DNA of 64,000 bases from assembly GCF_040938485.1 (NCBI RefSeq), contig NW_027270929.1, positions 930,001 through 994,000 of the forward strand. The letters are read 5' to 3'. Source of the DNA: Diadema antillarum. Its lineage: Eukaryota. Below are positions 3,901 to 54,100 of this stretch, piece after piece. The notes below the pieces were generated by a model, which saw only the letters and a program-made list of their open reading frames with translations, was not told the DNA's origin and did no database searches. Position 1 is the stretch's first letter, and every line of letters begins with the position of its first letter. The translations under genes and the position numbers were made by a program.

Positions 3901-6703
3901 TTTCTGGGGTCGTCATAGTCTACAACCCTGATCAGGCAAATCATGAGAGAGAATTAGACACATGGTATGATACACTGCACATGTGATGTTTATTGAAGCA
4001 TTATTTAAATCTAGACTGACTGTTATGTTCCATCCACTTGACCACTTCTTTGAGTTAATGATAGAAGATAGAAATTTCATTTTATAATTTTAACTACTGG
4101 TAGTAGTTTAGCTTGCATTTTCCAACAAAACTAAAGCAAATAACGATCCCATATTAGATATGACTCATACTATATTTCTCCCCCTCTATGACATTATATA
4201 ACTCTTAAATTACCATATTCTTTCAACTCTGTCTTGTTTGCACTCTGTTATATGTTACGCTTGAACTGCACTCTGGAGTAAATGTTATTTTTTGTGACTA
4301 ATTCTTTTTATGTGTGTGGTGTGTGTGTGACCAATTTTTCTTGCTACATATGTAGATGAGGGAGTCACAGTTGTGCATCGTCCTATGGTAATTTGTTGGT
4401 TTTCACATCGTTCAAATCACAAATTCACTTTCTCCTGTTCTTTCTATGTTCAAAGGTACACACACTTTGTGACCCAGCAGGGACTAAAGGATGGTCAGTG
4501 TGTCATAATGGGCCATCATAGACCCAACACGTCAGAAGCAGTCAGGGTACAAATACGTGAGTGTCTCAACTAATTGGTTGTTGCTGTCATTTTCCTGAAA
4601 GTATTTGAAAACACGATTTAAAATTGGTCACTTAGTTTGTGTGTAGTTGATGCTGAAGGGGCTTTGTTTCTTCACTTTAATCCAAATGTAAGCATATAGT
4701 TTGCTATAGATGTAGCCACCTTAAGGTGGCTAATTCAAACATATACCTGTATTAGCACACTTTCTCTGCATTTACTGGTAGCAAGTATAAATGAAGCTTA
4801 AATTGTTTTTTTGTCCCCGCCGAACGAGTTCGAGCAGGGGACTATGAAACGGGCTCCGTACGTGTGTGTGTCCGTCCGTGTGTCCGTGCGTCCGTGTGTC
4901 CGTCCGTGTGTGCGTCCGTGTGTGATCAAAATGTTCAAAATGCTACTCCTTCGCCATTTCTAACCCGATTTGATTCTGTTTGCTTTATATGATAGCACTA
5001 CATGGGAGCTTTGAAACTTCTATACAGAATTTCAATTGTGACCTTTGACCTTGACCTTTGACCTATATTGTACATTTTGCTTCAAAATGCTACTCCTTCG
5101 CCATTTCTAACCCGATTTTGATTCCGTTTGCTTTATATGATGGCACTAGGTGAGGGCTTCAAAACTTCTACACAGAATTTTGACCTTTGACCTTGATTTT
5201 TGACCTATATTGTACATTTTGCTACAAAATGCTACTCCTTTGCCATTTGTAACCCGATTTCGATTCCGTTTGCTTTATATGATGGCACTAGGTGAGGGCT
5301 TCAAAACTTCTACACGGAATTTTGACCTTTGACTTCTTTGACCTTTGACCTTGATTTTTGACCTATATTGTACATTTTGCTACAAAATGCTACTCCTTCG
5401 CCATTTCTAACCCGATTTCGATTCCGTTTGCTTTATGTGATGGCACTAGGTGAGGGCTTCAAAACTTCTACACAGAATTTTGACCTTTGACTTCTTTGAC
5501 CTTTGACCTTGATTTTTGACCTATATTGTACATTGCCTACAAAATGCTACTCCTTCGCCATTTCTAACCCGATTTTGATTCCGTTTGCTTTATGTGATGG
5601 CACTAGGTGAGGGCTGCAAAACTTCTACACAGAATTTTGACCTTTGACTTCTTTGACCTTTGACCTTGATTTTTGACCTATATTGTACATTTTGCTACAA
5701 AATGCTACTCCTTTGCCATTTGTAACCCGATTTCAATTCCGTTTGCTTTAAGTGATGGCACTAGGTGAGGGCTTCAAAACTTCTACACAGAATTTTGACC
5801 TTTGACTTCTTTGACCTTTGACCTTGATTTTTTTACCTATATTGTACATTGGCTACAAAATGCTACTCCTTCGCCATTTCTAACCCGATTTCGATTCCGT
5901 TTGCTTTATGTGATGGCACTAGGTGAGGGCTTCAAAACTTCTACGTAGAATTTTGACCTTTGACTTCTTTGACCTTTGACCTTCATCTTTTTACCTATAT
6001 TGTACATTTTGCTACTAAATGCTACTTCCGGCGGGGACATATATTACGCACCGCGTAATTTCTACTTTTCCTTGTTTTAATTCATATTACTTTTTATCTT
6101 CTAGCTTTACGGTGCTGTTAAGGTTTTGTTACAATGTACAGGGGAAAGGAGTTTCTGCTAAAATTGGAATGGTGTGCAATGTATTAACAAAATTTGCATG
6201 CCATAATACCGTAATTTAGCCAATCAAGAATCAAACGTTAGTAATTCCTATATGTTTGAGATGTTGTTAATGAGCAGTGTAACGTGACAAATAACATTTC
6301 TCCCAAACAGAGAAGTTCAAAACTTCTATGTAATGATATCATCACTCAAGCATGATTCTTGTACAGTGTATATGACCAAGGAACTAGTGCATGTGCACGC
6401 CTGTCATTATCCATGTACACGTATTATGTTTTCCTTTTGCTTCATAAAATGCAAAGCAATTGCTAATTGCTAATGAAGATGATAGTGCACATGTGCATCA
6501 TCATAACTGATTACGTTCTTCCTCGACTCTTTCTTTTCCCCTCTCAAATATCAGCAACAAAGATGTCGAAGGTCAACCATGTGCAGACCAATCTTGAAGA
6601 TGATGCAGACTCGGTGAGGGCAGACTTCAACCTGTTCCTCTCCAAAGTTTTGGCTTTCATTAGCAAGAGGCAAGACCAGGAGGAGCTCAGCATAATACAA
6701 TGA
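929..6703 (+). CDS. IFT22: Intraflagellar transport protein 22 (Rab-like 5), 6 coding exons, 186 aa
   Basis: Exons 929-967, 2599-2681, 3270-3359, 3866-3964, 4456-4556, 6555-6703. All junctions GT-AG, phases consistent, total 561 nt. Translation MLKAKILVIGPTE-SGKSVLSNFLADATEISGGEYHPTQGVR-ILEFES...EVELWDCSGDQK-FDECWPAFMKDVSGVVIVYN...-...VQTNLEDDADSVRADFNLFLSKVLAFISKRQDQEELSIIQ* matches IFT22/RABL5 as recalled (P-loop GPxESGKS, LWDCxGD, SNLEDD, EELSI C-terminus). Confidence 0.96.
1454..2068. mobile_element. TTAA-flanked MITE, Kolobok-like (family A, copy 1)
   Basis: TTAA|AGGACAAGTTCACCTTCAT ... ATGAAGGTGGACTTGTCCT|TTAA terminal inverted repeats with TTAA duplication. An inverted homologue lies at 24664-25220. 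Confidence 0.8.
2200..2424. mobile_element. TA-flanked MITE with CTGTAAAA-type ends (family C)
   Basis: TACGGTAAAAGTGGATATTTT ... AATTTTACAGTA; internal sequence shared with 25310-25505. Confidence 0.6.
3597..3785. mobile_element. Tc1/mariner (pogo/Tigger-like) MITE, family B
   Basis: TA|CAGTGCACTCCCGTTATAACGAA ... TTCGTTATAATGGGAGTCCACTG|TA. Homologues at 9430-9615, ~13596-13778 and 31518-31707. Confidence 0.8.
4803..6069 (+). mobile_element. Helentron/DINE-1-like non-autonomous element carrying a ~158-bp satellite array
   Basis: Subterminal inverted repeat TGTCCCCGCCG (4812-4822) / CGGCGGGGACA (6029-6039). GTCC/GT-rich microsatellite at ~4862-4924, about 7 tandem units, 3' hairpin ATTACGC-ACC-GCGTAAT (6043-6059), T-rich flanks. 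Confidence 0.75.
4937..6027. repeat. Tandem repeat, ~7 copies of a 142-158 bp unit
   Basis: Unit AAAATGCTACTCCTTCGCCATTTCTAACCCGATTTCGATTCCG...TTGACCTTTGAC...ATTGTACATTTTGCTAC restarts near 4937, 5084, 5226, 5384, 5541, 5699, 5857 and 6017. Confidence 0.95.
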
Positions 6704-26852: not shown

Positions 26853-27422
26853 GTTCATTATGTACTCTTAAACTTCTTTCTTTTCTTTTTTTCAGTTTGA
26901 TGTCCAATTTGCAATCCTTCTAAAAAAGGATTTGTTGTATGATTTGTTTTCCATATAAGTTATGTAAAAAAAAAAAAAAAAAAAAACTCTATCATGAGGT
27001 GCTAGTGTTAATGCTATAGTAGATACAAAGCAATACATTTACATGTATTTTCTGAACAGGACAGATACAATGTATTTCTCATCCCTTACACACTTGGATA
27101 CATGTCCACAGTATTCACACTCAGTATCTGAATTAATGTTTCGTAAAGTTGTCACTTCATTATGTAATCTTAACTTCTTCTTTTTTTTTCAGCTTAATGA
27201 TAATGTCCAATATGTAATCCTTCTAAAAAAGGGATGTGTTGTATGATTTGTTTTCCTTCGGTTATGTTTAAAAAAATAGAACTTTATCATGAGGTGCTAA
27301 TGTTGATGCTATAATAGATACAAAGCAATACATTTACAAATGTACATGTATTTTCTGAACAGGAGAGATATACAATGTATTTCTCATCACTTATACACTT
27401 GGATACATGTTCACAGTATTCA
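26853..27422. repeat. Diverged tandem duplication of ~300 bp
   Basis: 26853-27116 aligns with 27155-27422 (e.g. TCATGAGGTGCTA..GATACAAAGCAATACATTTACA..ATGTATTTTCTGAACAGGA). Confidence 0.8.
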
Positions 27423-28109
27423 TTTTTCTTTTTAGGATTGTTCAGAGTTTTGAAATCACAAGTGAAGAGGAGAAACCATAATTGTATGTATCTCATACAA
27501 TGATGAAGAAATGATGAACATTTGTGTGCAGGCAAGGTTTCAGTAAATGAAAAAGAAATCCATGAAACCTAGAAATTTGTGAAGTGTAATTTGCATATTG
27601 TTTGCTCGTCTAAATAATCTGGAATGCATAAAAATACAATGTACAAAAAACTGCACAAGCAGGTCAGTCTTTCTGAATCAACAGTAGATACCATCTGTAA
27701 GAATATATACTTGTATTTTATAAATACATGTACTGTACTTGATGTAAAGCTGAGGTAAAGTTGAATTTTGGAGCAGTCTAATACGTATCATTGTCATACA
27801 CTGTATCTCTGAATTAATGATTTTGTGTAACAGCATCCACTTTGAATATGCAGAAATTAGATCTGATTCCAAAACAATAACAGGTTCAGCTAGGTTTTAA
27901 CAATGAAATTTGTGTTGATCCACTGCCTTTGATTTGTATGAGCTGGTGATGTTTTTGAACTGCCTCTCTGTTTATTTACCCAAACTTTTTAGCAAAGGGG
28001 GGATGGGAAATCGAGGACTTCAACTATATTCTCACGTGTACAGTGATAGTTGACAAGGAAGTAATAGTGTAGCAATCCTTTGGGAAGGAAGTACACACTG
28101 AAATATTGA

Positions 28110-28797
28110 AACAAGACAGGGAAAACTGACCTGAAACAAATAATGAATAATGAAAACTTTGAGCAAAGAAAATGGGTTTTCATCAGGATTCTAGATCGGT
28201 TTTCGTCCCAAACCCTTAACTCTCTTTGCTCGCGTGGTCAGAAGCTATAGTGTGTGTATGTGTGCCACACACACACACACACACGTTTACCTGACATAAA
28301 CCCAAGGGATGTGAATCAACTTTGGAATAAATGCAAGGGATCGCCGAAGCGATGCAGCTTTTTTTGTAATATATATTGAAATAAGAAAGGGATACTATCC
28401 AGAGGTCTTGGGTTCGAATCCCGATGAAAACCCATTCATTTTCTTTGCTCAAAGTTTTCACTAGTCATTATTTGTTTCTGGTCAGTTTTCCCTTTCTTGT
28501 TTCAATATATATTTAAAAAAAAGCTGCATCGCTTCGGCGATCCCTCGCATTTATTCCAAAGTTGATTCACATCCTATGGGTTTATGTCAGGTTAATGTGT
28601 GTGTGTGTGTGTGTGGCACACATACACACACTATATAATAGCTTCTGACAACCCGAGCAAAGAGAGTTAAGGGTTTGGGACGAACACCGATCTAGGGCTT
28701 TCAATAGCTCAGTCGGTAGAGCACCGGTCTAGTAATCCGGAGGTCTTGGGTTCGAATCCCGATGAAAACCCATTTTCTTTGCTCAAAGTTTTCACTA
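28110..28797. mobile_element. tRNA-Thr(AGT)-derived SINE-like repeat in tandem plus inverted arrangement
   Basis: Head at ~28685-28770 has A box TAGCTCAGTCGG, B box GGTTCGAATCC and anticodon loop CTAGTAA. The body at 28490-28695 is the reverse complement of 28190-28392. Confidence 0.75.
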
Positions 28798-31517
28798 TAT
28801 ATATTTATATAAATATATATATATATATATATTTTAATAAAAGTGACGTGGCATCAAACTCCTTTGTATTTCATTCCATATCAATTTTATGTGTCACAGG
28901 AATATGTTCAAAGTGAGAGGTCCTTACTTCTAGAGAGTTATTATAACTATAATACTATATACTATAATATAGTATAATACTTCAAGTGAATTTTTCGAAG
29001 TTCACAAAATTATTGTATTTACTGCTTTGCATCAAGTTGCACACATTAGACTCATTCCAGTTGGGATGACAATAAGAAACTTTGGAGGCAAATGAGCGTG
29101 TACAATTAGCATAATATGATATTTATTGTTTGAAGGTAGCATGTCATAACTTAGCAAACCAAGTCTTGATCACCAAGCTTGCGTTGGAAAAGCTCACTTG
29201 TTAGTGTTTAATAGCTTTGACAGAGAGGCAAACACACTTCTCAGGATTGCTCACGCAGTAAAATTTATATGCCAGATTCTTTTAATATGTGCATGATTGG
29301 CTTAGTCTAAGTCACAGCAAGTCTGCAGCCTGAACACCTCCGGATCTTCAGCTCAATACATGTATAAAGAAGTTACCAGTAAGCAATAATACAACACACT
29401 ATATACATAATAATATACTATATAGAGAAAGAAACGAAAATGTCTTGTGGAACTTCTGACCAAATAACAATAACAGCACTGAAGTTACTTCTGGCCCTTT
29501 ATTTGAAAAAGAAAAACAGATATTTCAAGCGACTGTGTCCAGAGACGAGCTGACTTTCTGACTTCATTTCAGAGGTCCCATAGTAGGGTAATACACTAAA
29601 AACACAATAAAAACTATCTATTAACACAGTTGAAACATTTGTAGTATTGAATTTTCTTATATGATTGGTACAATAAAAAAAAAAAAAACCGAAATTGCTA
29701 TATTCAGCATTCAAATTAAAATGATATACAAATGTACAATAATTTTTTTTTCTTTTCTAGTACAAACACATCCTGGCAACTCTCAACATGTATATCACGG
29801 AAGCATTTGTCAATTTAACTTTATTCTCCTTCTTTTCTTTCTTTTTTTCATGTGTGTCCAGTAGATTATTTGACATGTGGTGTGCTTGGAGAAATTTAGG
29901 TTGTGTGCTTGAGAAATGACGTCCACAATCAGTAACTCTTATTTAAAATATGCTTGAAGAAATCATATTTTAGCATTACAGTTCTCAATTGAAAAAAAAC
30001 AACAAACAAACAGATAAATAGTACATTTTGTAGAAATAAATTGTAAACACATGTACATGTACAATGTACATTCGAGATGGTAAAACATCAGTACACTCAC
30101 ATTTCAATCTTTATACTTTCTTTTACTATCAATTTATTTACATTTTTAATACTTTCTCAAGCATATATGCTTTTTCTGCTATCAAAAAAAACAAAAAAAA
30201 ACAGACTTTGCATTTTGGCTTTTTCTTCTTTCTGTTTTTTCAATAGAAAAATAGAATAAAAATTTGTGATAAATACAAAGACGAGTATGATATATTCGAT
30301 ATGCACAAGGATAGGCCATAATGTACATTATATCACACAGAATTGGATGAACTAGGCATCAGTCAAACAGAGATCAATGAATATTCATAAATAACAAAAT
30401 CTAGACTACAACGTGGCCTGGCTTTCAGGGACCAACACTTGGTGGGATTTGGAACACATATCATGTCGATGCTATGTTCGTGCAACGTACAAGGTGTACA
30501 CAGTACGAGTGTGCAAGAAAACAAAAAATTGCCAGGGAGACAAGAATGCACTCACTGTTATTGCTTTGCTGTTTGACGAAGTCTACAGGCAGCCACTAAG
30601 GAATCGTGATTACACTTGGGTTTGAAGACTTGCATGAGAGATGATAACATCTGTATAGAAAGGCATGTTAATTTTGTTTATTTTTTATTCAAAGCGGAAG
30701 GCTTGCTCTGCATGTCTGCAGCTTGCTACACACTTTACTGCAATTGGGCAAAAAACAACAAAAAATCAAGAGGCTCCCAGTCAACCCTCACAGACTTCAG
30801 ATAACTTGGGAACAATCTCACAGCTAGGAATTACATTACACCTCGTATCTAACTTACAGAATTTCCTAGTGGTGACTTGAGATACCAACTCCCTAGCTTT
30901 ACAAAGTACAAAACTTCCACCTGCCATATTTTTACCCACTGGTGGGGGATTGGGTTAGGAACATCTTTATACCGCACGAGTACAGAAACTGATGGCAATA
31001 TCAAGGACTACACAACCTCCCGCCATGGAACTCACTGCATGTAATACTACGTGCAGAAATACATGTAACACTAAATATGAAAGAGGCAGCAAACAGTGTT
31101 AAGGCTCTGCAGGCTCCTTACATGTAACAAGTGGAAGAATATCTCTATATGAGAATTTACAGAAGAACAGCATGGGAAATTGGGAAGTTGTTACTTACTT
31201 CCCTTTTTCTAGGGTGCAACATGTGCTGGAATAGTCAGACAGACACGCAGACAAACTCATTCTAAAGTTTAGATCAACACACCTACAAGGTTAACCTGCC
31301 CTTTTTGATCCAATGCACAAAGACAACAATAGTTGCTACAAAAGAACATTCTTCACTATCTCTTTCACTCACCAGTAACAATTATTCACTCACCAGTAAC
31401 AATTATTCACACACAGCAGTATCTGCAGAAATTCTCCCATTTAATTAACGACAACCACAGCTGTTCCACACATGAAGTCAACGTAAGTCAGCTTGAAATG
31501 GTAACCAACGGTAGTAG

Positions 31518-39481: not shown

Positions 39482-42332
39482 ATTTATCGAACCAACGTAA
39501 CGATTAGGCTCGAAAGATGCGTCAAAACACTTCTCAGTAGGTTCCGGATGACCGGCGAAGCAAAATTTTCTCGCGAGAAGGAAAATTCCGGCGATGAATT
39601 TATGGAAAAATTTCAAACCGCGGAGCTATGCAGGAGAACCTCCTGTCGGCTGGAACGAACGCGAACGTATTGCTGGACGCGCGTGCGGGCTCTCCTATTA
39701 TTACTCTTTATGCTTCGTAGTCTCTTTCGAGACTTCCGAAATAAAATATCAATAATAATCATAATGAACTAGACAATTCAGATCAACAACATTTATAGTC
39801 TGCAAGTATATCAATATTCAACATCATATATTTGACACCCTTATCTACACCCTCATGGCCTATGGCTAATAATACTAGATAATTCCCTAGCTATCCCACA
39901 GAAAAAAAACAAAAAAAGTCTAGTTTCATTGTGCATCCTAACATGTAAACATACCAAACTAACCACCCAGGTGTTGAACTTGCAATTAAGTTGTCTCGAC
40001 CCATAGCATTATACTTCAGTTATTATGTATGAATACATTGTGATTAATAACACACACACAAGTAGTATCTGGACTACTAAACAAAAATTCCGATGAGATG
40101 TGCATTATCATTAATGACCTAATGGTGCAAGGTGTAAATCCATTTCTCATTATAATCCTACTACAACATTGTGAATTTGAGATGACATTTTCTGAAAAAA
40201 AAATTACAATTAAAATTGAAAATTAAGAGCAAACAACACAGTGTTTGTTAACAGCTCTAACTTGTTACACAGGGTAAAAGGGAAGGGCATTATTATGACA
40301 GTGGGTCATTTAGCACATAGCATATCATGCTGTTTATATCTGTAAATTTTGTGGATACTGCTACACTCTTCTGCCTCAGAAGGGTTCAATATACCAAGTT
40401 GCACACAAGACAGTTTGTGCTAATCAGTGCTGTGAAAGAAGCTGTTAGAAGCAGTGACAAAAATCTATCCATTGGTGCACTAACATAATGGGTTTTTAGC
40501 ACGAGTCACTGAGTTAATCACACATACTGTATCTTATCTTATTTTGACTGAGTACTTTAAGTTCAGAATAAATGATGGCTGCTATCTACAAGTTTTGTCA
40601 CAAGGATTTTGAACAAGACTGACTCCAAAGATTGGAAATGTAACATGATTCCATCAAAAAGAGTGAATTACAATTGAAACAAAAGGATCATTCCAAATCT
40701 TATACAGAACTTTAACTTCAGGAAAAGCAAGGCTGATATCTACAAATAAAGACTTTAAATTTACATCTCTTATTACATGGGGAACAGACAACAAGATTCA
40801 TCAAGAGAAAATGAAAAAGTAACAAATCCCCCCCCCCCAAAAAAAAAAGAAGAAATAAATGAAATAAAATAAAATAAATAAAGGAAACAAGAATGCTTTC
40901 AGATACTATGAACATTCCCAATCCTGAAACAGACTACTCTAAAGAAAACAACAATAACTCAATCTGTAAAAAGCAATTTGTGAACATAAAGCTGAATGAA
41001 ACTTGGCAAAAGTGAGATGACGGTGCAAGTACTCCAATGAACACAGACTACAAGCATGATTAATTTGGTCTGAAATTGCGAATCTACTGGTGAAAAGCAT
41101 GCAGAGCATTAGATGAATTCAAGTAAGCTGAAGTGCTTTCATCTCATCAGGGGTTTTTTTTTTTCCCCCACAACTTTCACCAGTAGCTAGAATTTCACAA
41201 GTGATCACTCGCCACAAAACCACACGACAGAAGAGGGATACTAAGAAAATTAGACAAGACATTAAATCTGTATATGAAGAGCTAATTCCAGGTTCGATTT
41301 GCTTTTCAGTGTTATTTCTCTTTTACATTCAGAGCATTTCATCCCATTCTACTTCATCTGCACATTAGAAACCTCGACTCAAAACAAGAAAACACTTCAA
41401 GACAGTTTTCTGGGGCAGTGTTTGATGAGCAAAACTCGAAGAGTCCTTATCGCTTGGGTCAAACTGGCTCTGAAGGGCACGGTACAAACTCACTACAACA
41501 AATTTTGAGAAGAGAGAGGAGAGCATGCAACATGATTTGCATGGCAGCTTTCAGCTCATTCAGTTGAGAGCTTAAATACTTGTTGCCATGCAGCATCAAT
41601 TCCTGTTTTATGAAAGGCAAGTCTACAATTCATTGTATGAATACAACTTTCTTTGTATTTCATGTCAGCTGACCTCCCTTGCGGTGGGAGTTTCATTATC
41701 TGGTAGTGATGATGAGTGAATAGACGGCTCAAATCTTAGTAGGTGATATGCAATTTAAAGCTGACAGCCAACAAACAAATAAGATAATAGATGCAGGAAC
41801 ATCACTTTGGTAGCTGAATGCTGTTTCTTAATAAACCATGATTTTTACGTGTACAAAAAATATATTTTTTTTTTCAGATCTGACAAACAACAGAAGAAAA
41901 ACATCCATTTTCAAAGCTGATACAAAACAATTGAGAAAACAAATAATAGAAGTAGGAAAATTATTTCAGTGGTAGTGTGATGGTTGGTTATATACTGCAA
42001 TCTCACAAGAACAAAAAAGACCTGCACACACCTATCATGGGCACCAGTTTATCAAAGTTCCAGATATCTTCTCATATTATCTTTTGGCAAGACATCATGC
42101 ACACAAGAGTTCTCAGGCACCTACTTCTACCTCAAGTCAATCTTGTCTGAATGTGAACGTGATATTGTGCAATCACTCTGATTTAGGGGTTCCATTCACA
42201 CTACACAGGATGAAAACATTGAAAAAGCATGATAATACTACACTCGTGATTGAAGCATTTATGTGTGATTGGCTGTGTTTTCCCCACACAGATGTGGATG
42301 GATGCGTGTTTCTCAGTGTGATGGAAAAAGAA

Positions 42333-42570
42333 GTGCAGTTCACACAACACTCAGATGAATGCATTCAAACACACAACGCTTCTACTCTCATGTGAACGCA
42401 CCACTGAAGGTAGTGCAGTTCACACTACACTCAGATGAATGCATTCACACACACAAACACTTCTACACCCGTGTGAACTCACCACTAAGGGTAGTGCAGT
42501 ATACACTACACTCAGACGAATGCATTCACACACACACAACACTTCTACACTCGTGAACTCACCACTGAGG
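42333..42570. repeat. Minisatellite, 3 copies of ~80 bp
   Basis: GTGCAGTTCACAC..ACTCAGATGAATGCATTCA.ACACA..CTTCTAC..GTGAAC.CACCACT restarts at 42333, 42413 and 42494. Confidence 0.85.
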
Positions 42571-48100: not shown

Positions 48101-51100
48101 ACCAAAGATGCAATACACCTGCAACAATACTATAGTGGAAATGAATGAACACAAATATGGATATAACATAGGAGGATATCTGAGTGACTGCCTACTTTGT
48201 CTAGGACATGAGCAAATCAGACCGTACAGGAACAACACTCGGGTGAACATATCAATTTGTAAAACTACTTTTATGGTTCGCATAACTTGATGCCACCATT
48301 CACACCATCCTCACCTGTGTGGTATCAGAGATCAACTTCAGTTTGTCCTTGAGGTCATCCCTGTCCCGACAGAAGATGTCCACATTGCCGTCCCTTAGTG
48401 ACCCCAGGACAGTCAAGGCACTGTGACAGGTGTCGTGGCAGTGGGATGATAGTCCTGCACGGACGGGGACAATGACGTCAGCAGTGACCATGGATTCAAA
48501 TTCAGAGCTCAAACATATCATATGAATATCAAAAGGCAATATCCTACCATCTTACATGATTCCAATATTAAACAGATTTCCCAGCAGCCTGGCATTTGGT
48601 AAATAGATCTACATGTAGTTAAAAGATCAACAGCAAATCTAAATCATTTGAAGTGTTCGAAAAGTGCTCCTAGTATCATCTCATTACAATCTCCTAACTT
48701 CTTTGAACTTGCCTGACATAGTTCATTTACGTAATATGAGTTCCACATACATTTGTGTCTACATGCATGTCTCCAGACCTCATATCTATTTAGAATCAAT
48801 TATTACCATATTTTTGATTTGCTGATTTGATGATGATGATGGCGACAATAGTGACTTTTTTTTTCACTGTTAATACTTCCTACGCCAGAATTATGAAACA
48901 AAGTTGTCACTGCGGTCACACGACATTTTCTTCTGCGACAATTGCTCCATTCCTATTTTCTCCATGGACTTAGGGATAGGTTAAGGCTGTGATAGAGTTT
49001 TAGGTTCAGTTTGATGCGAGGATTAGGATTGGGGTTCTATAGGGTTATGTTGGTAGAATATGTGTTTGGATTAGTGTGCAGGTATTTCATGGGAGCAAAT
49101 ATCGCAGGAGCAAATGTCATGGAACCGGTCACGGCATTACAATTGTACCATATCATTATGACTGCTTAAAACCAATTGTCTGGAGGAAATGACTACCGGT
49201 ATACAGCATACTTGACTTAAGTAGTCACAGACTGACAAGTATTATGGCAACAATCTACTCAAATTCTACTCCCAATAAAGCTAATATATTGCAACTGATT
49301 GACAAATTGCCCTACATCGACGTAAATAAGCACTGAATTGATCAGTGTTATAGTAGTAGCCATGATAAAAAATCATGGGCGTACATACTCGAGCAGGATT
49401 CGAACCTACAACCTCCTGATCACCGGACAGGCGTCATCTCCACTAGACCACCGAGCTTTCGCCCGAGAGCAAGTGTTGGTTCTAATCCTTATAGCATGCA
49501 GCGGGTACTGCTTTGTTATTCAAATTCATGAATTTCTTCCGTCGAGATGTTTTAATTGCAACTGATTGACAAATTGCCCTACATCGACGTAAATAAGCAC
49601 TGAATTGATCAGTGTTTTAGTAGTAGCCATGATAAAAAATCATGGGCGTACATACTCGAGCAGGATTCGAACCTACGACCTCCTGATCACCGGACGGGCG
49701 TCATCTCCACTATTCCTTCCTATTTCTTCCGTCGAGATGTTTTCATTGCAACTGATTGACAAATTGCCCTACATGAATTTGAATAACAAAGCAGTACCCG
49801 CTGCATGCTATAAGGATTAGAACCAACACTTGCTTTCGGGCGAAAGCTCGGTGGTCTAGTGGAGATGACGCCTGTCCGGTGATCAGGAGGTCGTAGGTTC
49901 GAATCCTGCTCGAGTATGTACGCCCATGATTTTTTATCATGGCTACTACTAAAACACTGATCAATTCAGTGCTTATTTACGTCCATGTAGGGCAATTTGT
50001 CAATCAGTTGCAATGAAAACATCTCGACGGAAGAAATTCATGAATTTGAATAACAAAGCAGTACCCACTGCATGCTATAAGGATTAGAACCAACACTTGC
50101 TTTCAGGCGAAAGCTCGGTGGTCTAGTGGAGATGACGCCTGTCCGGTGATCAGGAGGTCGTAGGTTCGAATCCTGCTCGAGTATGTACGCCCATGATTTT
50201 TTATCATGGATACTACTAAAACACTGATCAATTCAGTGCTTATTTACGTCCATGTAGGGCAATTTGTCAATCAGTTGCAATGAAAACATCTCGACGGAAG
50301 AAATTCATGAATTTGAATAACAAAGCAGTACCCACTGCATGCTATAAGGATTAGAACCAACACTTGCTTTCGGGCGAAAGCTCGGTGGTCTAGTGGAGAT
50401 GACGCCTGTCCGGTGATCAGGAGGTCGTAAGTTCGAATCCTGCTCGAGTATGTACGCCCATGATTTTTTATCATGGCTACTACTAAAACACTGATCAATT
50501 CAGTGCTTATTTACGTCCATGTAGGGCAATTTGTCAATCAGTTGCAATGAAAACATCTCGACGGAAGAAATTCATGAATTTGAAGCTAATATATATATAT
50601 GACAATAGGTTTCAATGGCATGAATTGGATGTTTGGCAGGACTTTGCTGAGAGGATCTAATTATTTGTCTTTCAACATCTACTTACTCTCCCCTACATCC
50701 ACTGGGGCAAGATTAGATGTGGCTTTCCCCTGCAGAAGATACTCGCCGAGAGAGTGAGAGTATGCCGCTAGCGCTCCAACCAGCTCACCAAAGTCTGAAA
50801 CGGTAGAAAACCAATTACTTGTTTCTATCCAGTGTAAGAACACCCAACACTGCACATAATTGTGCATGCACATGAATATACACAAAATAGTATCACCACA
50901 AGTGGTGCAATGTCATAGTGTACAGTAGCACAAAGTACATAAAGTATTGAAACAAGGGCAAGGCAACGGGAGTTAAGTACTTGTACAATTTATCACAGTC
51001 ATGCATTCATTTCGTTACACCTTCAATAAGCTAGTGGAAATGGTTGATTAAATACAAAAACAAAACAAAAGCAAAACAGGATACTTCTCTCTAGTTTCAA

Positions 51101-54100
51101 TTTACAATCCTTTATTAACCCAGAGTCTACCAAGCACATAATCTGCAATGGCTTTTCTGTGATATTCAATGGTATCTACAGGACTGGTGCTCAAATACAC
51201 ATCCTTGCAGTAATATGGGGTGTAAACTAAAACCAGATCTGGGCATTTCCTTCAAATTACAATTTTTTAATTATTCAGGAAACTTTACAGATGAAGTTCT
51301 ACACAGCAAGTGCTCACACTCTCGATACAGCAGGTAACTGGCCACTCAGTTTTAACCCCAGTAGGACTAAATTCAACTTAACTTTACCACAGGAATGCAA
51401 TTGGATGCAAGGGGTCAGATTAAGATTTCTGGATATGAGACCTTGCCAGGTCTAGAGAAGGAGCAACAGACATCTCACACATGGTTCAATTGCTTCTTTG
51501 ACGTGAAAGAAAGCACATTCAAGTAGAATTTGACACAAAACTGCTTCTTATGAGATAACCAAATGAATATATAGATGAATATAAAACTCCAGCAGCTTAT
51601 TCCTCTTGAGGCCAGGCTAGATTGCTGGGAGGTTGGCTGGGGCTGTGACTGACCTGTGCCATTCTGTTGGTAGGACATGAAATATCTGTCCAGGTTCTGC
51701 ACACATTCATTGGCAATAGGTGTTCGGCTTAGCAGATACTCTGAAAGAAAAAGAAATAGAAGAAAAAAAAGAACATATTTTTAAAAATCAGGAAAATAGG
51801 ACGAGACAACTGATGACATATGTAAGCACAAGCAAAATGATGATTTACAAGTGTTTATCTACTATGATATGAACTACAGATTCATGGACAAGCAGTTAAT
51901 TACCAATCTGATACATTTTAAATATCCTTCCCTTTGTCATTCATTCCCTGATCTAATTATCCAATCAGTCTACGTGCCTAGTTTTAGAGAAAAATTGTTC
52001 ATGTGTTATGTTTTCCTATTGCCTTAGAGCTGCCTAGACGTAAATTGTACAATGAGCACTATGTTGAAGTGCTATTCAATATCCATCAGCAAAATGCATA
52101 AACAACAATATATCTTCTTACAATGGTCCATGGCGTGCTCCAAAAGGTTTCATCTCTGGATTTTCAATGTGGTCACAAAAAATTCTGAGCTGCAGCTAGT
52201 TAGACAAGTCTCTTCAGAAACACCGAAGCAACAAACCCTGAAATACCTCACACAGGCAGCTGGAAAGAGCAAAAGAACCAGAAACAATGACATTGCTTAC
52301 CTGGTGTACAAGTGGCTGTTGCAAACTGAGGATCGTCCATCTGTTGGAGGATGAGTCGTAACGTGTCCTCGGCGCCCTCTACTGCTCTGGCTGTACGGAA
52401 TTGAACATAAACTATATGTCATCACTTTCCTTCCTTAGTTACCACATGACTGGAGTAAGCAGTTGTGATCAGTAACCTTGTTGAAATTTACAGCTGAAGA
52501 TGGCTTTAATAGTATGCTATCCCTATGTTCGGTACCTACATGAGTGGCCTTTATCAAGCTTGAAAACCAGTGCAACAGATCCAAGAAAGGACTGCAAGAA
52601 TAATACTGATACAATGCATGCAAACACTGCATAGTCTTCAAAGAACTCACTTGCAAGTGTAAACACCAAGGCATTTTTTTTTTCACATACAGAATCATCA
52701 ACTACGAGCAAAAAAAGAAAAAAAGGTTAAAAGGTCAATTTCTATAGTGTGACAACCCTTACATTATCGGCAGTCAGTGATTATTTCTTTTCCTGTGTAA
52801 AAACAGCATGATTACCTTCATAACACAGCAATCTATTGGAGGGTTGCTAAGAGAGACGCTACATGGCTCACACTGCACTTTCTAAAATGGAGAGAAACAG
52901 CAATGATCACACTGAAACACCACCACCAACTCCCAGTGGGGAAGGGGGCTAAACGTTCCTCACCTAAAAGCGCCCTCCTCTGTTCCTCCATCTGCCGTCG
53001 GAGCTGCGCCTCGCGGCTTGCCGTCTCGGCCACCGACATCTGGAGCTTCTCCACGGTCAGCTGGGCGACCTGCTGGGCCTGTCTCACCTCCTCCGAGCTC
53101 CTTGAGACTGTGGTCAGCTGCCTCTTGGATTCCGCATTCTGTGGATGGATGGATTGAGGCAGGATTTCAAGTTTTCATTGGGGGAGGGGGCATTCACACG
53201 AAAAAAGTTTTGAGAACATGATAGGTTAGCTTGAAAGTGGTGATAGTTGAGAGTAGTTGGAAGATCTCTTCCATTGCAGTGTTAGTTTAAAGTCTCCTCT
53301 TTATGGTTTTCTTTTCAATATCTTACTAAAAGGAGATAGATTTGATTTCTGCAACAGTTAATCAGACTATCCTTACACTTAATATTTCTGTAGGCACCTA
53401 AAATCACTGTATGCTGAACTCAGCCTTGACCTTGAAAATTCAGGCTGGTAGCAAATGTCAGCTATTATAAGTGGGGTTGTGTGGTCACTAGATCTTTTCT
53501 CCTGACTTTATAAACTTGATTTATCAGAGTAACGCAACTCTGCTACACATCAGCAGCCTTGAGAACAACCTGTTTGTGGAAAATCTGAACAATTTTTACT
53601 CAACTCAATTCTCTTGCAATGCAGCTACTTGTATATCACTTTTTACTATTCTTGAATCACTGATCATAACATTTTCTCTCTTTTCAATTCTGTGATGCAA
53701 AGAAAAGCTGTCACAGAAATTCTGACAACATCAAGAACAATGTGATATGCAGCACCAAATGCATAAAAACAACACACATTGTACACAACACTACACAGCA
53801 CCATAGAGTCATTATCAAAGTACCCTTTCCAATTAGTTACCACCTTTGGATTAACAAGATAATTGTATTTTATTGTGTTGTATTACAAGTGGAAATCAAA
53901 GAATACTGACCTCTCTCAGAAGGGTAACATGTTCCTCTCTGAGTTTGTTGTACACGTCTTTCATTTTCTTGAATCTCTCCTCATTCACTCTTGCCCTCTC
54001 TATTTGTCAGAAGATGAAAATAAAATGTAAGGCATTTAGCAAATTACAGAGACACAACAGAAATATGTGGGGACTGCTTAAAAACTGTCTCTTCATTCCA

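What the first reader, a model, noticed from the sequence alone, without database searches (positions are those of the whole stretch)
49278..50594. Five-unit tRNA-headed array with internal inversion inserted as one TSD-flanked event
About 1.8 minus-strand units (49290-49772, the second truncated with a small rearrangement) flip at a CATG microhomology into three near-identical 267-bp plus units (49773-50582). The whole 1.29 kb is flanked by the direct repeat AAGCTAATATAT. That geometry is what twin-primed target-primed reverse transcription produces. It implies the template was a multimeric RNA or circle of a tRNA-derived unit rather than a monomeric SINE, and there is no poly-A tail. With the analogous array at 28110-28797, this points to a possibly undescribed mode of spread: tRNA-promoter satellites mobilised as concatemers. 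The mechanism is inference.
Basis: partly seen in the sequence, partly recalled or inferred. Interest (0 to 1): 0.7.

Follow-up and report, generated by a model that had tools for sequence, protein, structure and literature searches.

The report
Penelope-style insertion of tRNA-like tandem repeat
The 1.3-kb two-armed array is a real single insertion, absent from the other chromosome copy, of an abundant 267-base repeat carrying a tRNA-like module, and its shape matches the way Penelope-like retrotransposons are already known to insert.

Summary
There are 1.8 minus-strand units, a flip at CATG, three 267-bp plus units, no poly-A, and AAGCTAATATAT on both sides (twice in the window, 0 expected).

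The other haplotype contig, C616, joins the two flanks directly and carries one copy of the 12-mer and no array. The whole block is therefore one hemizygous insertion.

The geometry is a family rule:
- 20 of 22 independent loci are [inverted arm][direct arm].
- The inversion point differs at every locus.
- TSDs are about 10-14 bp.
- In 16 of 16 complete loci, one outer end lies at unit position ~242 and the other at ~277.

[quoted passage not shown] Intact PLEs abound in this genome and are arranged the same way.

A T6 run after each tRNA-like module argues against Pol III concatemers.

The possibly new part is a tRNA-like module where PLE passengers usually carry a hammerhead ribozyme. The partner PLE was not identified. 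This scan had already reached the same reading on other copies of this family.

The parts
49278..49289 (.). Left copy of the target-site duplication AAGCTAATATAT
   Evidence: A single copy is present at the empty allele C616:782665-782691.
49290..49529 (-). Minus-arm unit 1, unit positions 242 to 1. Its outer end is the tail-less reverse-transcription start site (..CAGTTGCAA).
   Evidence: It has three private substitutions against the family consensus.
49530..49712 (-). Minus-arm unit 2, 5'-truncated (unit positions 267 to 85), ending inside the tRNA-like module
   Evidence: Partial tRNA match at 49659-49713.
49713..49721 (.). 9-nt filler between two minus-strand pieces, read as a template-switch scar
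49722..49772 (-). Third minus-strand piece (unit positions ~265 to ~213), running into the flip
   Evidence: (I5-I7).
49772..49775 (.). Inversion junction with CATG (3-4 nt) microhomology
   Evidence: Junctions at other loci show 0-6 nt of overlap or 1-24 nt of filler.
49773..50573 (+). Three full 267-bp plus units (49773-50039, 50040-50306, 50307-50573)
   Evidence: All three share G212C, which the minus units lack.
50549..50584 (+). 35-nt 'tail' (unit positions 243 to ~277), present only at this outer end. It ends ..CATGAATTTGA at the second reverse-transcription start site.
   Evidence: 16 of 16 complete loci have one tailed and one tail-less end.
50583..50594 (.). Right copy of the target-site duplication, at the edge of an (AT)n tract
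49384..49458 (-). tRNA-like module, Thr(GGU)-like, in the minus arm
   Evidence: 42.8 bits, five non-standard pairs.
49844..49918 (+). tRNA-like module of plus unit 1, with further copies at 50111-50185 and 50378-50452. A-box- and B-box-like motifs are intact.
   Evidence: Box motifs were read from the sequence.
49930..49935 (+). T6 run, a Pol III terminator-type signal, 12 nt after the tRNA-like module, in the loop of a 7-bp hairpin. It repeats in every unit.
28103..28797 (.). Second, unrelated family (~333-bp unit, tRNA-Thr(AGU)-like) with the same [inverted][direct] build and a ~40-nt longer left end, next to (TA)n
   Evidence: Present on both haplotypes: 731 bp in the window against 729 bp on C616 between the flank matches.

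Best explanation
The block is one retro-insertion of a non-coding, non-autonomous 267-bp tandem element, made by the reverse transcriptase/GIY-YIG endonuclease of a Penelope-like element.

Proposed sequence of events:
1. The enzyme nicks both strands of an AT-rich target about 10-12 bp apart.
2. Each 3' end primes cDNA synthesis on multi-unit element RNA. One strand starts at unit position ~242 and the other at ~277.
3. Both cDNAs run toward the RNA 5' end and stop at arbitrary points.
4. Their ends are joined by a few bases of microhomology (CATG here) or with filler.

This gives two outward-pointing, 5'-truncated tandem arms, a one-sided 35-nt tail, and a TSD.

Shown here: a single insertion event, the family-wide geometry, the fixed asymmetric ends, arms that share array-specific variants, and abundant intact PLEs with the same arrangement in this genome.

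Inferred: that a PLE enzyme did it, that the template was RNA, and what the tRNA-like module does. My guess for the module is an RNase P/Z-type processing or stabilising role, standing where PLE passengers usually carry a hammerhead ribozyme. It is unlikely to be the promoter of the template RNA.
For: Single event:
- The flanks abut on haplotype contig C616, with one 12-mer and no array.

Family rule:
- 269 or more unit matches in 39 scored regions, out of 641 candidate regions.
- 20 of 22 independent loci are [minus arm][plus arm], and none is [plus][minus].
- 16 of 16 complete loci have ends at 241-245 and at 276-282.
- 17 of 22 loci have TSDs of about 10-14 bp.
- Arms range from 0.2 to more than 21 units.
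- Every locus has a different junction, with 0-6 nt of overlap or filler.

Same template for both arms:
- Array-specific variants are shared by both arms in L032, L033 and L034.

Match to published PLE behaviour:
- Partial tandems, an adjacent inverted 5'-truncated copy and a 30-40-bp tail at one end (PMC8557442).
- A PLE protein cleaves and extends both strands, starts reverse transcription at two adjacent internal sites that define the tail, prefers AT-rich targets and uses multi-copy RNA (PMC11167929).

Control within this genome:
- 146 or more GIY-YIG hits.
- Two sampled elements have intact RT plus C-terminal GIY-YIG ORFs of 955 and 1031 aa. They are tandem and end in (TA)n tracts 33 and 66 nt into the ORF.
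- Neighbouring opposite-strand GIY-YIG hits are in (-,+) order 34 times and (+,-) order twice (my count from the table).

Unit geometry:
- A short ORF starts at unit position 243, exactly at the tail-less end. The tailed end lies 35 nt into it, as in the sampled PLEs.
Against: - No autonomous partner was identified.
- There is no hammerhead or other known ribozyme in the unit.
- In the window's own array the three plus units share G212C and the two minus units do not. Either the template was heterogeneous or the plus arm changed after insertion.
- The PLE assignment rests on anatomy matched to published descriptions, not on a demonstrated enzyme-template pair.
Confidence: 0.75

Rival explanations
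1. This is L1-type twin priming by a LINE (CR1/L2-type, the known partners of sea-urchin tRNA-derived SINEs) acting on a concatemeric SINE RNA. This is essentially the first reader's model.
For: - The unit has a tRNA-like head with A- and B-box-like motifs.
- There is a TSD, and an inversion with microhomology.
- Sea-urchin tRNA SINEs are listed with CR1/L2 partners (PMC3747384).
Against: - Twin priming uses a variable internal priming site and affects only a minority of insertions. Here 20 of 22 loci are inverted, and both ends are fixed 35 nt apart with strictly one of each.
- There is no poly-A or microsatellite 3' tail.
- Seamless multi-unit arms are not a LINE/SINE feature.
- A T6 run inside each unit blocks a Pol III SINE transcript.
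Confidence: 0.08
2. This is a foldback-type DNA transposon or MITE whose long inverted termini are built of tandem subrepeats and which moves by cut-and-paste.
For: Inverted arms made of tandem units, and a TSD of roughly constant size.
Against: - The two termini are not inverted copies of each other. One is always 35 nt longer (16 of 16).
- The centre differs at every locus, with microhomology or filler typical of joined cDNA ends.
- Arm lengths are unrelated to each other.
- There is no shared internal or coding part.
- TSD length varies from 10 to 14 bp.
Confidence: 0.05
3. A monomer or short insertion arrived first. The array then grew, and part of it inverted locally by unequal exchange or replication slippage.
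For: - The window's plus units share G212C, and two of them share G28A, which the minus units lack.
- L035 shows a roughly three-unit higher-order pattern.
- Some post-insertion change in unit number is therefore plausible.
Against: - The empty allele lacks everything, not just the extra units.
- The same two-armed, tail-on-one-side build recurs at 20 or more unrelated loci, down to 0.37-kb insertions with less than one unit per arm.
- Local inversions would give both orientations, yet [plus][minus] was never seen.
Confidence: 0.07
4. This is an assembly artefact, caused by fold-back chimeric long reads collapsing a simple array into a palindrome.
For: Palindromic tandem repeats are known trouble spots for assemblers (PMC8557442 notes this for PLEs).
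Against: - Four loci are assembled identically on two different contigs or places: L037/L038, L040/L041, L043/L044 and L049/L050.
- TSDs and fixed asymmetric ends recur at every locus.
- The arms are unequal and carry their own substitutions.
Confidence: 0.02

Closest known systems
Penelope-like element (PLE) insertion architecture (Craig et al. 2021, PMC8557442; Frangieh et al. 2024, PMC11167929)
   Same: Partial tandems, an adjacent inverted 5'-truncated copy, a 30-40-nt tail at one end only, AT-rich or microsatellite targets, no poly-A, priming of both strands, and two adjacent internal reverse-transcription start sites.
   Different: The unit is 267 bp and non-coding, and it carries a tRNA-like module. 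No sequence link to an autonomous PLE has been shown yet. The tail was strictly one-sided here (16 of 16), whereas the papers say 'often'.
Animal non-LTR retrozymes and non-autonomous PLE derivatives (bioRxiv 10.64898/2026.07.22.740005; the non-autonomous Chlamys element MRC1 in PMC8557442)
   Same: Short non-coding units in head-to-tail arrays, dispersed through the genome and thought to ride on PLE enzymes.
   Different: Retrozymes are defined by a type I hammerhead ribozyme in every repeat. This unit has none and has a tRNA-like module instead. Circular RNA has not been shown here. The preprint does not mention tRNA, tails or inverted arms.
L1 twin priming (Ostertag and Kazazian 2001, from my own knowledge)
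   Same: Both nicked target strands prime cDNA on the same kind of RNA. The result is an inverted 5' part joined to a direct 3' part by microhomology, within one TSD.
   Different: L1 starts at the poly-A and at a variable internal site chosen by chance homology. Here both starts are fixed sequence positions, there is no poly-A, and inversion is the rule rather than the exception.
tRNA-derived SINEs of sea urchins and bivalves, including tandem and palindromic SINE structures in the blood clam (PMC3747384, PMC4824008, PMC11481361)
   Same: A tRNA(Thr)-like head with Pol III box motifs. In bivalves, SINE arrays of 4-15 units and palindromes were noted.
   Different: Classic SINEs insert as monomers through a LINE-like 3' tail and are Pol III transcripts. 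Here a T6 run follows the tRNA-like part, the 3' end is PLE-like, and insertions are multi-unit and two-armed. The bivalve paper explained its arrays by recombination, not by PLE-type insertion.

Membership tests
PLE-type insertion / PLE-dependent non-autonomous element | An inverted 5'-truncated copy directly next to direct (tandem) copies, with 3' ends pointing outward | tested here: met
   The window plus 20 of 22 loci. [plus][minus] was never seen.
PLE-type insertion / PLE-dependent non-autonomous element | [quoted passage not shown] | tested here: met
   Ends lie at unit positions 241-245 and 276-282, one of each in 16 of 16 complete loci. In the window they are 49290 and 50584.
PLE-type insertion / PLE-dependent non-autonomous element | An AT-rich or microsatellite target, a short TSD of variable length, and no poly-A | tested here: met
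   TSDs of about 10-14 bp. The window target lies at the edge of an (AT)n tract. The sampled PLEs and the second family lie in (TA)n.
PLE-type insertion / PLE-dependent non-autonomous element | Sequence similarity to an autonomous PLE around its 3' end or ORF start | tested here: inconclusive
   No similarity to the two PLE families fetched (L051, L052). Other families could not be fetched.
PLE-type insertion / PLE-dependent non-autonomous element | Potentially active RT + GIY-YIG elements present in the same genome | tested here: met
   146 or more GIY-YIG hits over the cut-off. [quoted passage not shown]
Non-LTR retrozyme | A type I hammerhead ribozyme in each tandem repeat | tested here: not met
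   An Rfam scan at E up to 10, both strands, gave only tRNA matches.
Non-LTR retrozyme | Unit-length circular RNA | not testable with these tools
tRNA-derived SINE (LINE-mobilised) | A tRNA-derived head with an internal Pol III promoter | tested here: met
   Rfam tRNA scores of 37-43 bits, an ARAGORN Thr(GGU) call, and A-box- and B-box-like motifs.
tRNA-derived SINE (LINE-mobilised) | A Pol III transcript that covers the whole element up to the 3' end used for priming | tested here: not met
   A T6 run lies 12 nt after the tRNA-like part, about 80 nt before the first start site. No transcript data were available.
tRNA-derived SINE (LINE-mobilised) | A LINE-like 3' tail, poly-A or short terminal repeats, and monomeric insertion | tested here: not met
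   There is no such tail, and insertions are multi-unit and two-armed.
L1-type twin priming | A poly-A at the direct end and a variable internal priming site at the inverted end | tested here: not met
   Both ends are fixed and there is no poly-A.
Foldback / TIR DNA transposon | The two termini are inverted copies of each other, with a constant TSD length | tested here: not met
   The termini differ by the 35-nt tail at every complete locus, and the TSD is 10-14 bp.

The most novel reading that the evidence does not exclude
The tRNA-like module is the functional stand-in for the hammerhead ribozyme of ordinary PLEs and retrozymes. It sits about 95 nt upstream of the first reverse-transcription start, much as the hammerhead does in the anole PLE, and host RNase P/Z would cut the multi-unit transcript there.

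The strict one-tailed, one-untailed rule (16 of 16) would mean that a PLE dimer primes the two target strands in a concerted way from two different neighbouring sites.

Together these would define a ribozyme-less, tRNA-processed class of PLE passengers and give a natural 267-nt minimal template for dissecting PLE integration.
Probability: 0.25. Interest if true: 0.7.

Novelty: new variant of a known kind. Interest (0 to 1): 0.45.

Why it matters
PLE integration is the least understood of the retrotransposon mechanisms. So far it has one in vitro system and no minimal template.

This family offers several things:
- A 267-nt non-coding substrate.
- Hundreds of young insertions, with empty and filled alleles in a single individual.
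- Precisely mapped start sites.
- A clean rule, one tailed and one untailed end, that a mechanism has to explain.

It also shows that tRNA-headed repeats, which annotation pipelines would call SINEs, satellites or foldback/MITE elements, can be PLE passengers. That may apply to the unexplained tandem and palindromic 'SINE' structures reported in bivalves. For genome annotation it is a caution, not a new class of mobile DNA.

Tried and rejected
- Ribozymes. Rfam at E up to 10 on the array and at E up to 1 on two PLE loci found no hammerhead or other self-cleaving RNA.
- Partner search. The unit and the second family were compared by BLAST with two fetched PLE families and with all fetched flanks, and nothing was shared beyond simple repeats. 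I did not try to read those loci by other routes.
There is therefore no read-level support for the array, no expression data, and no test for circles.
- Empty-site guess. A shorter gapped pattern then found the site, which has a shorter AT run.
- Lead from an earlier scan note. That note reported a conserved AGCWACGTC motif at a fixed distance before PLE ends. It is present in L052, 89 nt before the end. The 267-bp unit has only TACGTC, at 30 and 66 nt from its ends, so I do not count it as a link.
- Possible related subfamily. The diverged 69-bp minus arm of L042 looked like one, but it reads as the same sequence with a 5-nt deletion and decay.
- Snap-back (hairpin self-priming) origin. Rejected because the arms differ in length and in end position, and the flanks show a direct TSD, not an inverted duplication.

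Full report
**1. What is there**

Tandem Repeats Finder gives three 267-bp copies at 49772-50584 with 98% matches. The repeat finder gives 425-nt inverted arms between 49288-49712 and the plus units, 98% complementary.

Mapped to one unit, the left arm consists of:
- Unit positions 242 to 1 (49290-49529).
- Unit positions 267 to 85 (49530-49712).
- A 9-nt filler (49713-49721).
- Unit positions ~265 to ~213 (49722-49772).

The strand flips at CATG (49772-49775). Three full plus units and 10-11 nt of a fourth follow.

AAGCTAATATAT sits at 49278-49289 and 50583-50594 and nowhere else in 64 kb. No match occurred in 100 shuffles.

Each full unit has a tRNA-like module. ARAGORN calls it Thr(GGU). 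Rfam scores it 37-43 bits against a threshold of 29, with five non-standard pairs. It has A-box- and B-box-like motifs. A T6 run follows 12 nt downstream, in the loop of a 7-bp hairpin.

**2. One event**

The assembly (1.75 Gb, 2963 contigs) holds both haplotypes.
- The left flank with its TSD (48290-49289) matches C616:781682-782680 at 97%.
- The right flank with its TSD (50583-51582) matches C616:782675-783671 at 92%.

The two flanks therefore abut on C616. A gapped pattern hits only C616:782665-782691, which reads AATAAAGCTAATATATATGACAATAGG. That is one 12-mer and no array.

The whole two-armed block is a single hemizygous insertion. Its units differ from the family consensus by 1-4 substitutions each, so it is not brand new. 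That fits the 3-8% divergence of the flanking haplotypes.

**3. The geometry is a family rule**

The unit has at least 269 matches in the 39 regions that were scored, out of 641 candidate regions. I fetched 20 further loci and used five of the automatic ones, giving 22 independent loci in all, counting the window's own.

- 20 of the 22 are [minus arm][plus arm], with unit 3' ends pointing outward. None is [plus][minus].
- Arms range from 0.2 to more than 21 units. Whole insertions range from 0.37 kb to more than 6.5 kb.
- The inversion point is different at every locus, with 0-6 nt of overlap or 1-24 nt of filler.
- 17 of 22 loci have a TSD of about 10-14 bp. The exceptions are cut by the fetch or decayed.
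- In all 16 complete loci, one outer end lies at unit position 241-245 (..CAGTTGCAA) and the other at 276-282 (..CATGAATTTGA). There were never two of the same kind.
- If each end chose its site independently, one of each in 16 of 16 loci would have a probability of about 1.5e-5. This is my own arithmetic.
- Units within an array are almost identical. Array-specific variants are shared by both arms in L032, L033 and L034. Both arms therefore come from the same kind of template.
- Four loci are assembled identically in two places, which argues against assembly artefacts.

**4. What it is**

This anatomy matches published descriptions of Penelope-like elements.

Craig et al. 2021 (PMC8557442) describe:
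- Partial tandems.
- An inverted 5'-truncated copy immediately adjacent.
- A 30-40-bp 'tail' often present at only one end.
- An insertion bias for microsatellites.

Frangieh et al. 2024 (PMC11167929) found that a purified PLE protein:
- Starts reverse transcription at two adjacent internal RNA sites, and the interval between them is the tail.
- Prefers AT-rich DNA.
- Probably uses multi-copy RNA.

The 35-nt interval between positions 242 and 277 is such a tail.

The genome itself provides a control.
- There are 146 or more GIY-YIG hits over the Pfam cut-off.
- They are tandem, with periods of 3633 and 3864 bp.
- They end in (TA)n tracts 33 and 66 nt into the ORF.
- In the table, neighbouring opposite-strand hits are in (-,+) order 34 times and (+,-) order twice. 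This is my hand count, and it includes some haplotype duplicates.

The 267-bp unit even mimics the PLE layout. A short ORF begins at unit position 243, right at the tail-less end, and the tailed end lies 35 nt into it.

**5. Template and the tRNA-like module**

The arms place the RNA 3' end at the flanks, so the template is the tRNA-sense strand and contains the U6 run. Pol III starting at the tRNA-like promoter should stop about 80 nt before the first start site. Pol III concatemers are therefore unlikely.

Read-through or Pol II transcripts of existing arrays are more likely, as proposed for PLEs. Template jumping or circles remain possible. The seamless 267-nt period cannot tell these apart.

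L035 shows a roughly three-unit higher-order pattern. The window's plus arm has a private shared variant. Templates can therefore be heterogeneous, or arrays change after insertion.

Arm inner ends are enriched just 3' of the tRNA-like module: 24 of 42 fall in 36% of the unit. This fits reverse transcriptase stalling at a structured module, but it is only a trend.

No ribozyme was found. My suggestion that the module replaces the hammerhead as a processing signal is inference only.

**6. Limits**

- The autonomous partner is not identified.
- No reads or RNA data could be obtained.
- The organism was not determined by me. Earlier notes of this scan call it a sea urchin.

**7. Literature and earlier notes**

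No held paper combines 'Penelope-like' with 'tRNA-like' in this sense. The retrozyme preprint does not mention tRNA.

Sea-urchin tRNA SINEs are listed with CR1/L2 partners. Tandem and palindromic SINE structures in a clam were attributed to recombination.

Other agents of this scan had already read other copies of this 267-bp family (s1-211250, s1-215053) and of the ~325-bp family as Penelope-style insertions. I reached the same reading before seeing those notes. They are not independent evidence.

**8. Verdict**

- The mechanism is the known PLE insertion mode, not a new one.
- The possibly new aspects are the tRNA-like module in place of a ribozyme and the strict one-of-each use of the two start sites.

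Noticed in passing
window 28103-28797: A second, unrelated tRNA-like family (~333-bp unit, Thr(AGU)-like, internal (GT)n) has the same [inverted][direct] build. Its left end is ~40 nt longer, and (TA)n lies on its right. It is present on both haplotypes, and the flanks are 100% identical to C616 there.
   Followed up: partly
G000 GIY-YIG hits (table); L051, L052: Autonomous PLE copies are very abundant, with identical ORF lengths (961 and 1031 aa) at many places. Neighbouring opposite-strand copies are almost always in (-,+) order (34 against 2). Two sampled families end 33 and 66 nt into their ORFs inside (TA)n tracts. No hammerhead was detected by Rfam in either.
   Followed up: partly
L035:3157-5559 (G000:C58): The minus arm shows a roughly three-unit higher-order pattern of variants (X Y Z Y' X Y Z X Y). 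This hints at a multi-unit heterogeneous template or later segmental duplication.
   Followed up: no
window 48910-49130: A ~215-bp dispersed repeat lies just left of the insertion. It matches dozens of scored places at 81-84% identity, with 1843 first-look candidates. It was not classified.
   Followed up: no
window 27300-29700 versus 48290-51582: Divergence between the two haplotype contigs (C41 and C616) is uneven. Identity is 100% around 27-30 kb and 92-97% around 48-52 kb.
   Followed up: no
L037 and L038 (G000:C74, 23 kb apart): The same two-armed insertion, with identical flanks and the same 29-nt-deleted outer unit, occurs twice on one contig. This is either a segmental duplication or an assembly duplication.
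   Followed up: no
L032:8152-8435: A second, small insertion of the same family lies 1.4 kb from a large one. Its two arms are joined by a 24-nt A/T-rich filler.
   Followed up: no
window 5179-6026 and 42332-42570: There are other tandem arrays in the window: a 158-bp unit with 5.4 copies (95% matches) and an 81-bp unit with 3 copies. Neither was examined.
   Followed up: no
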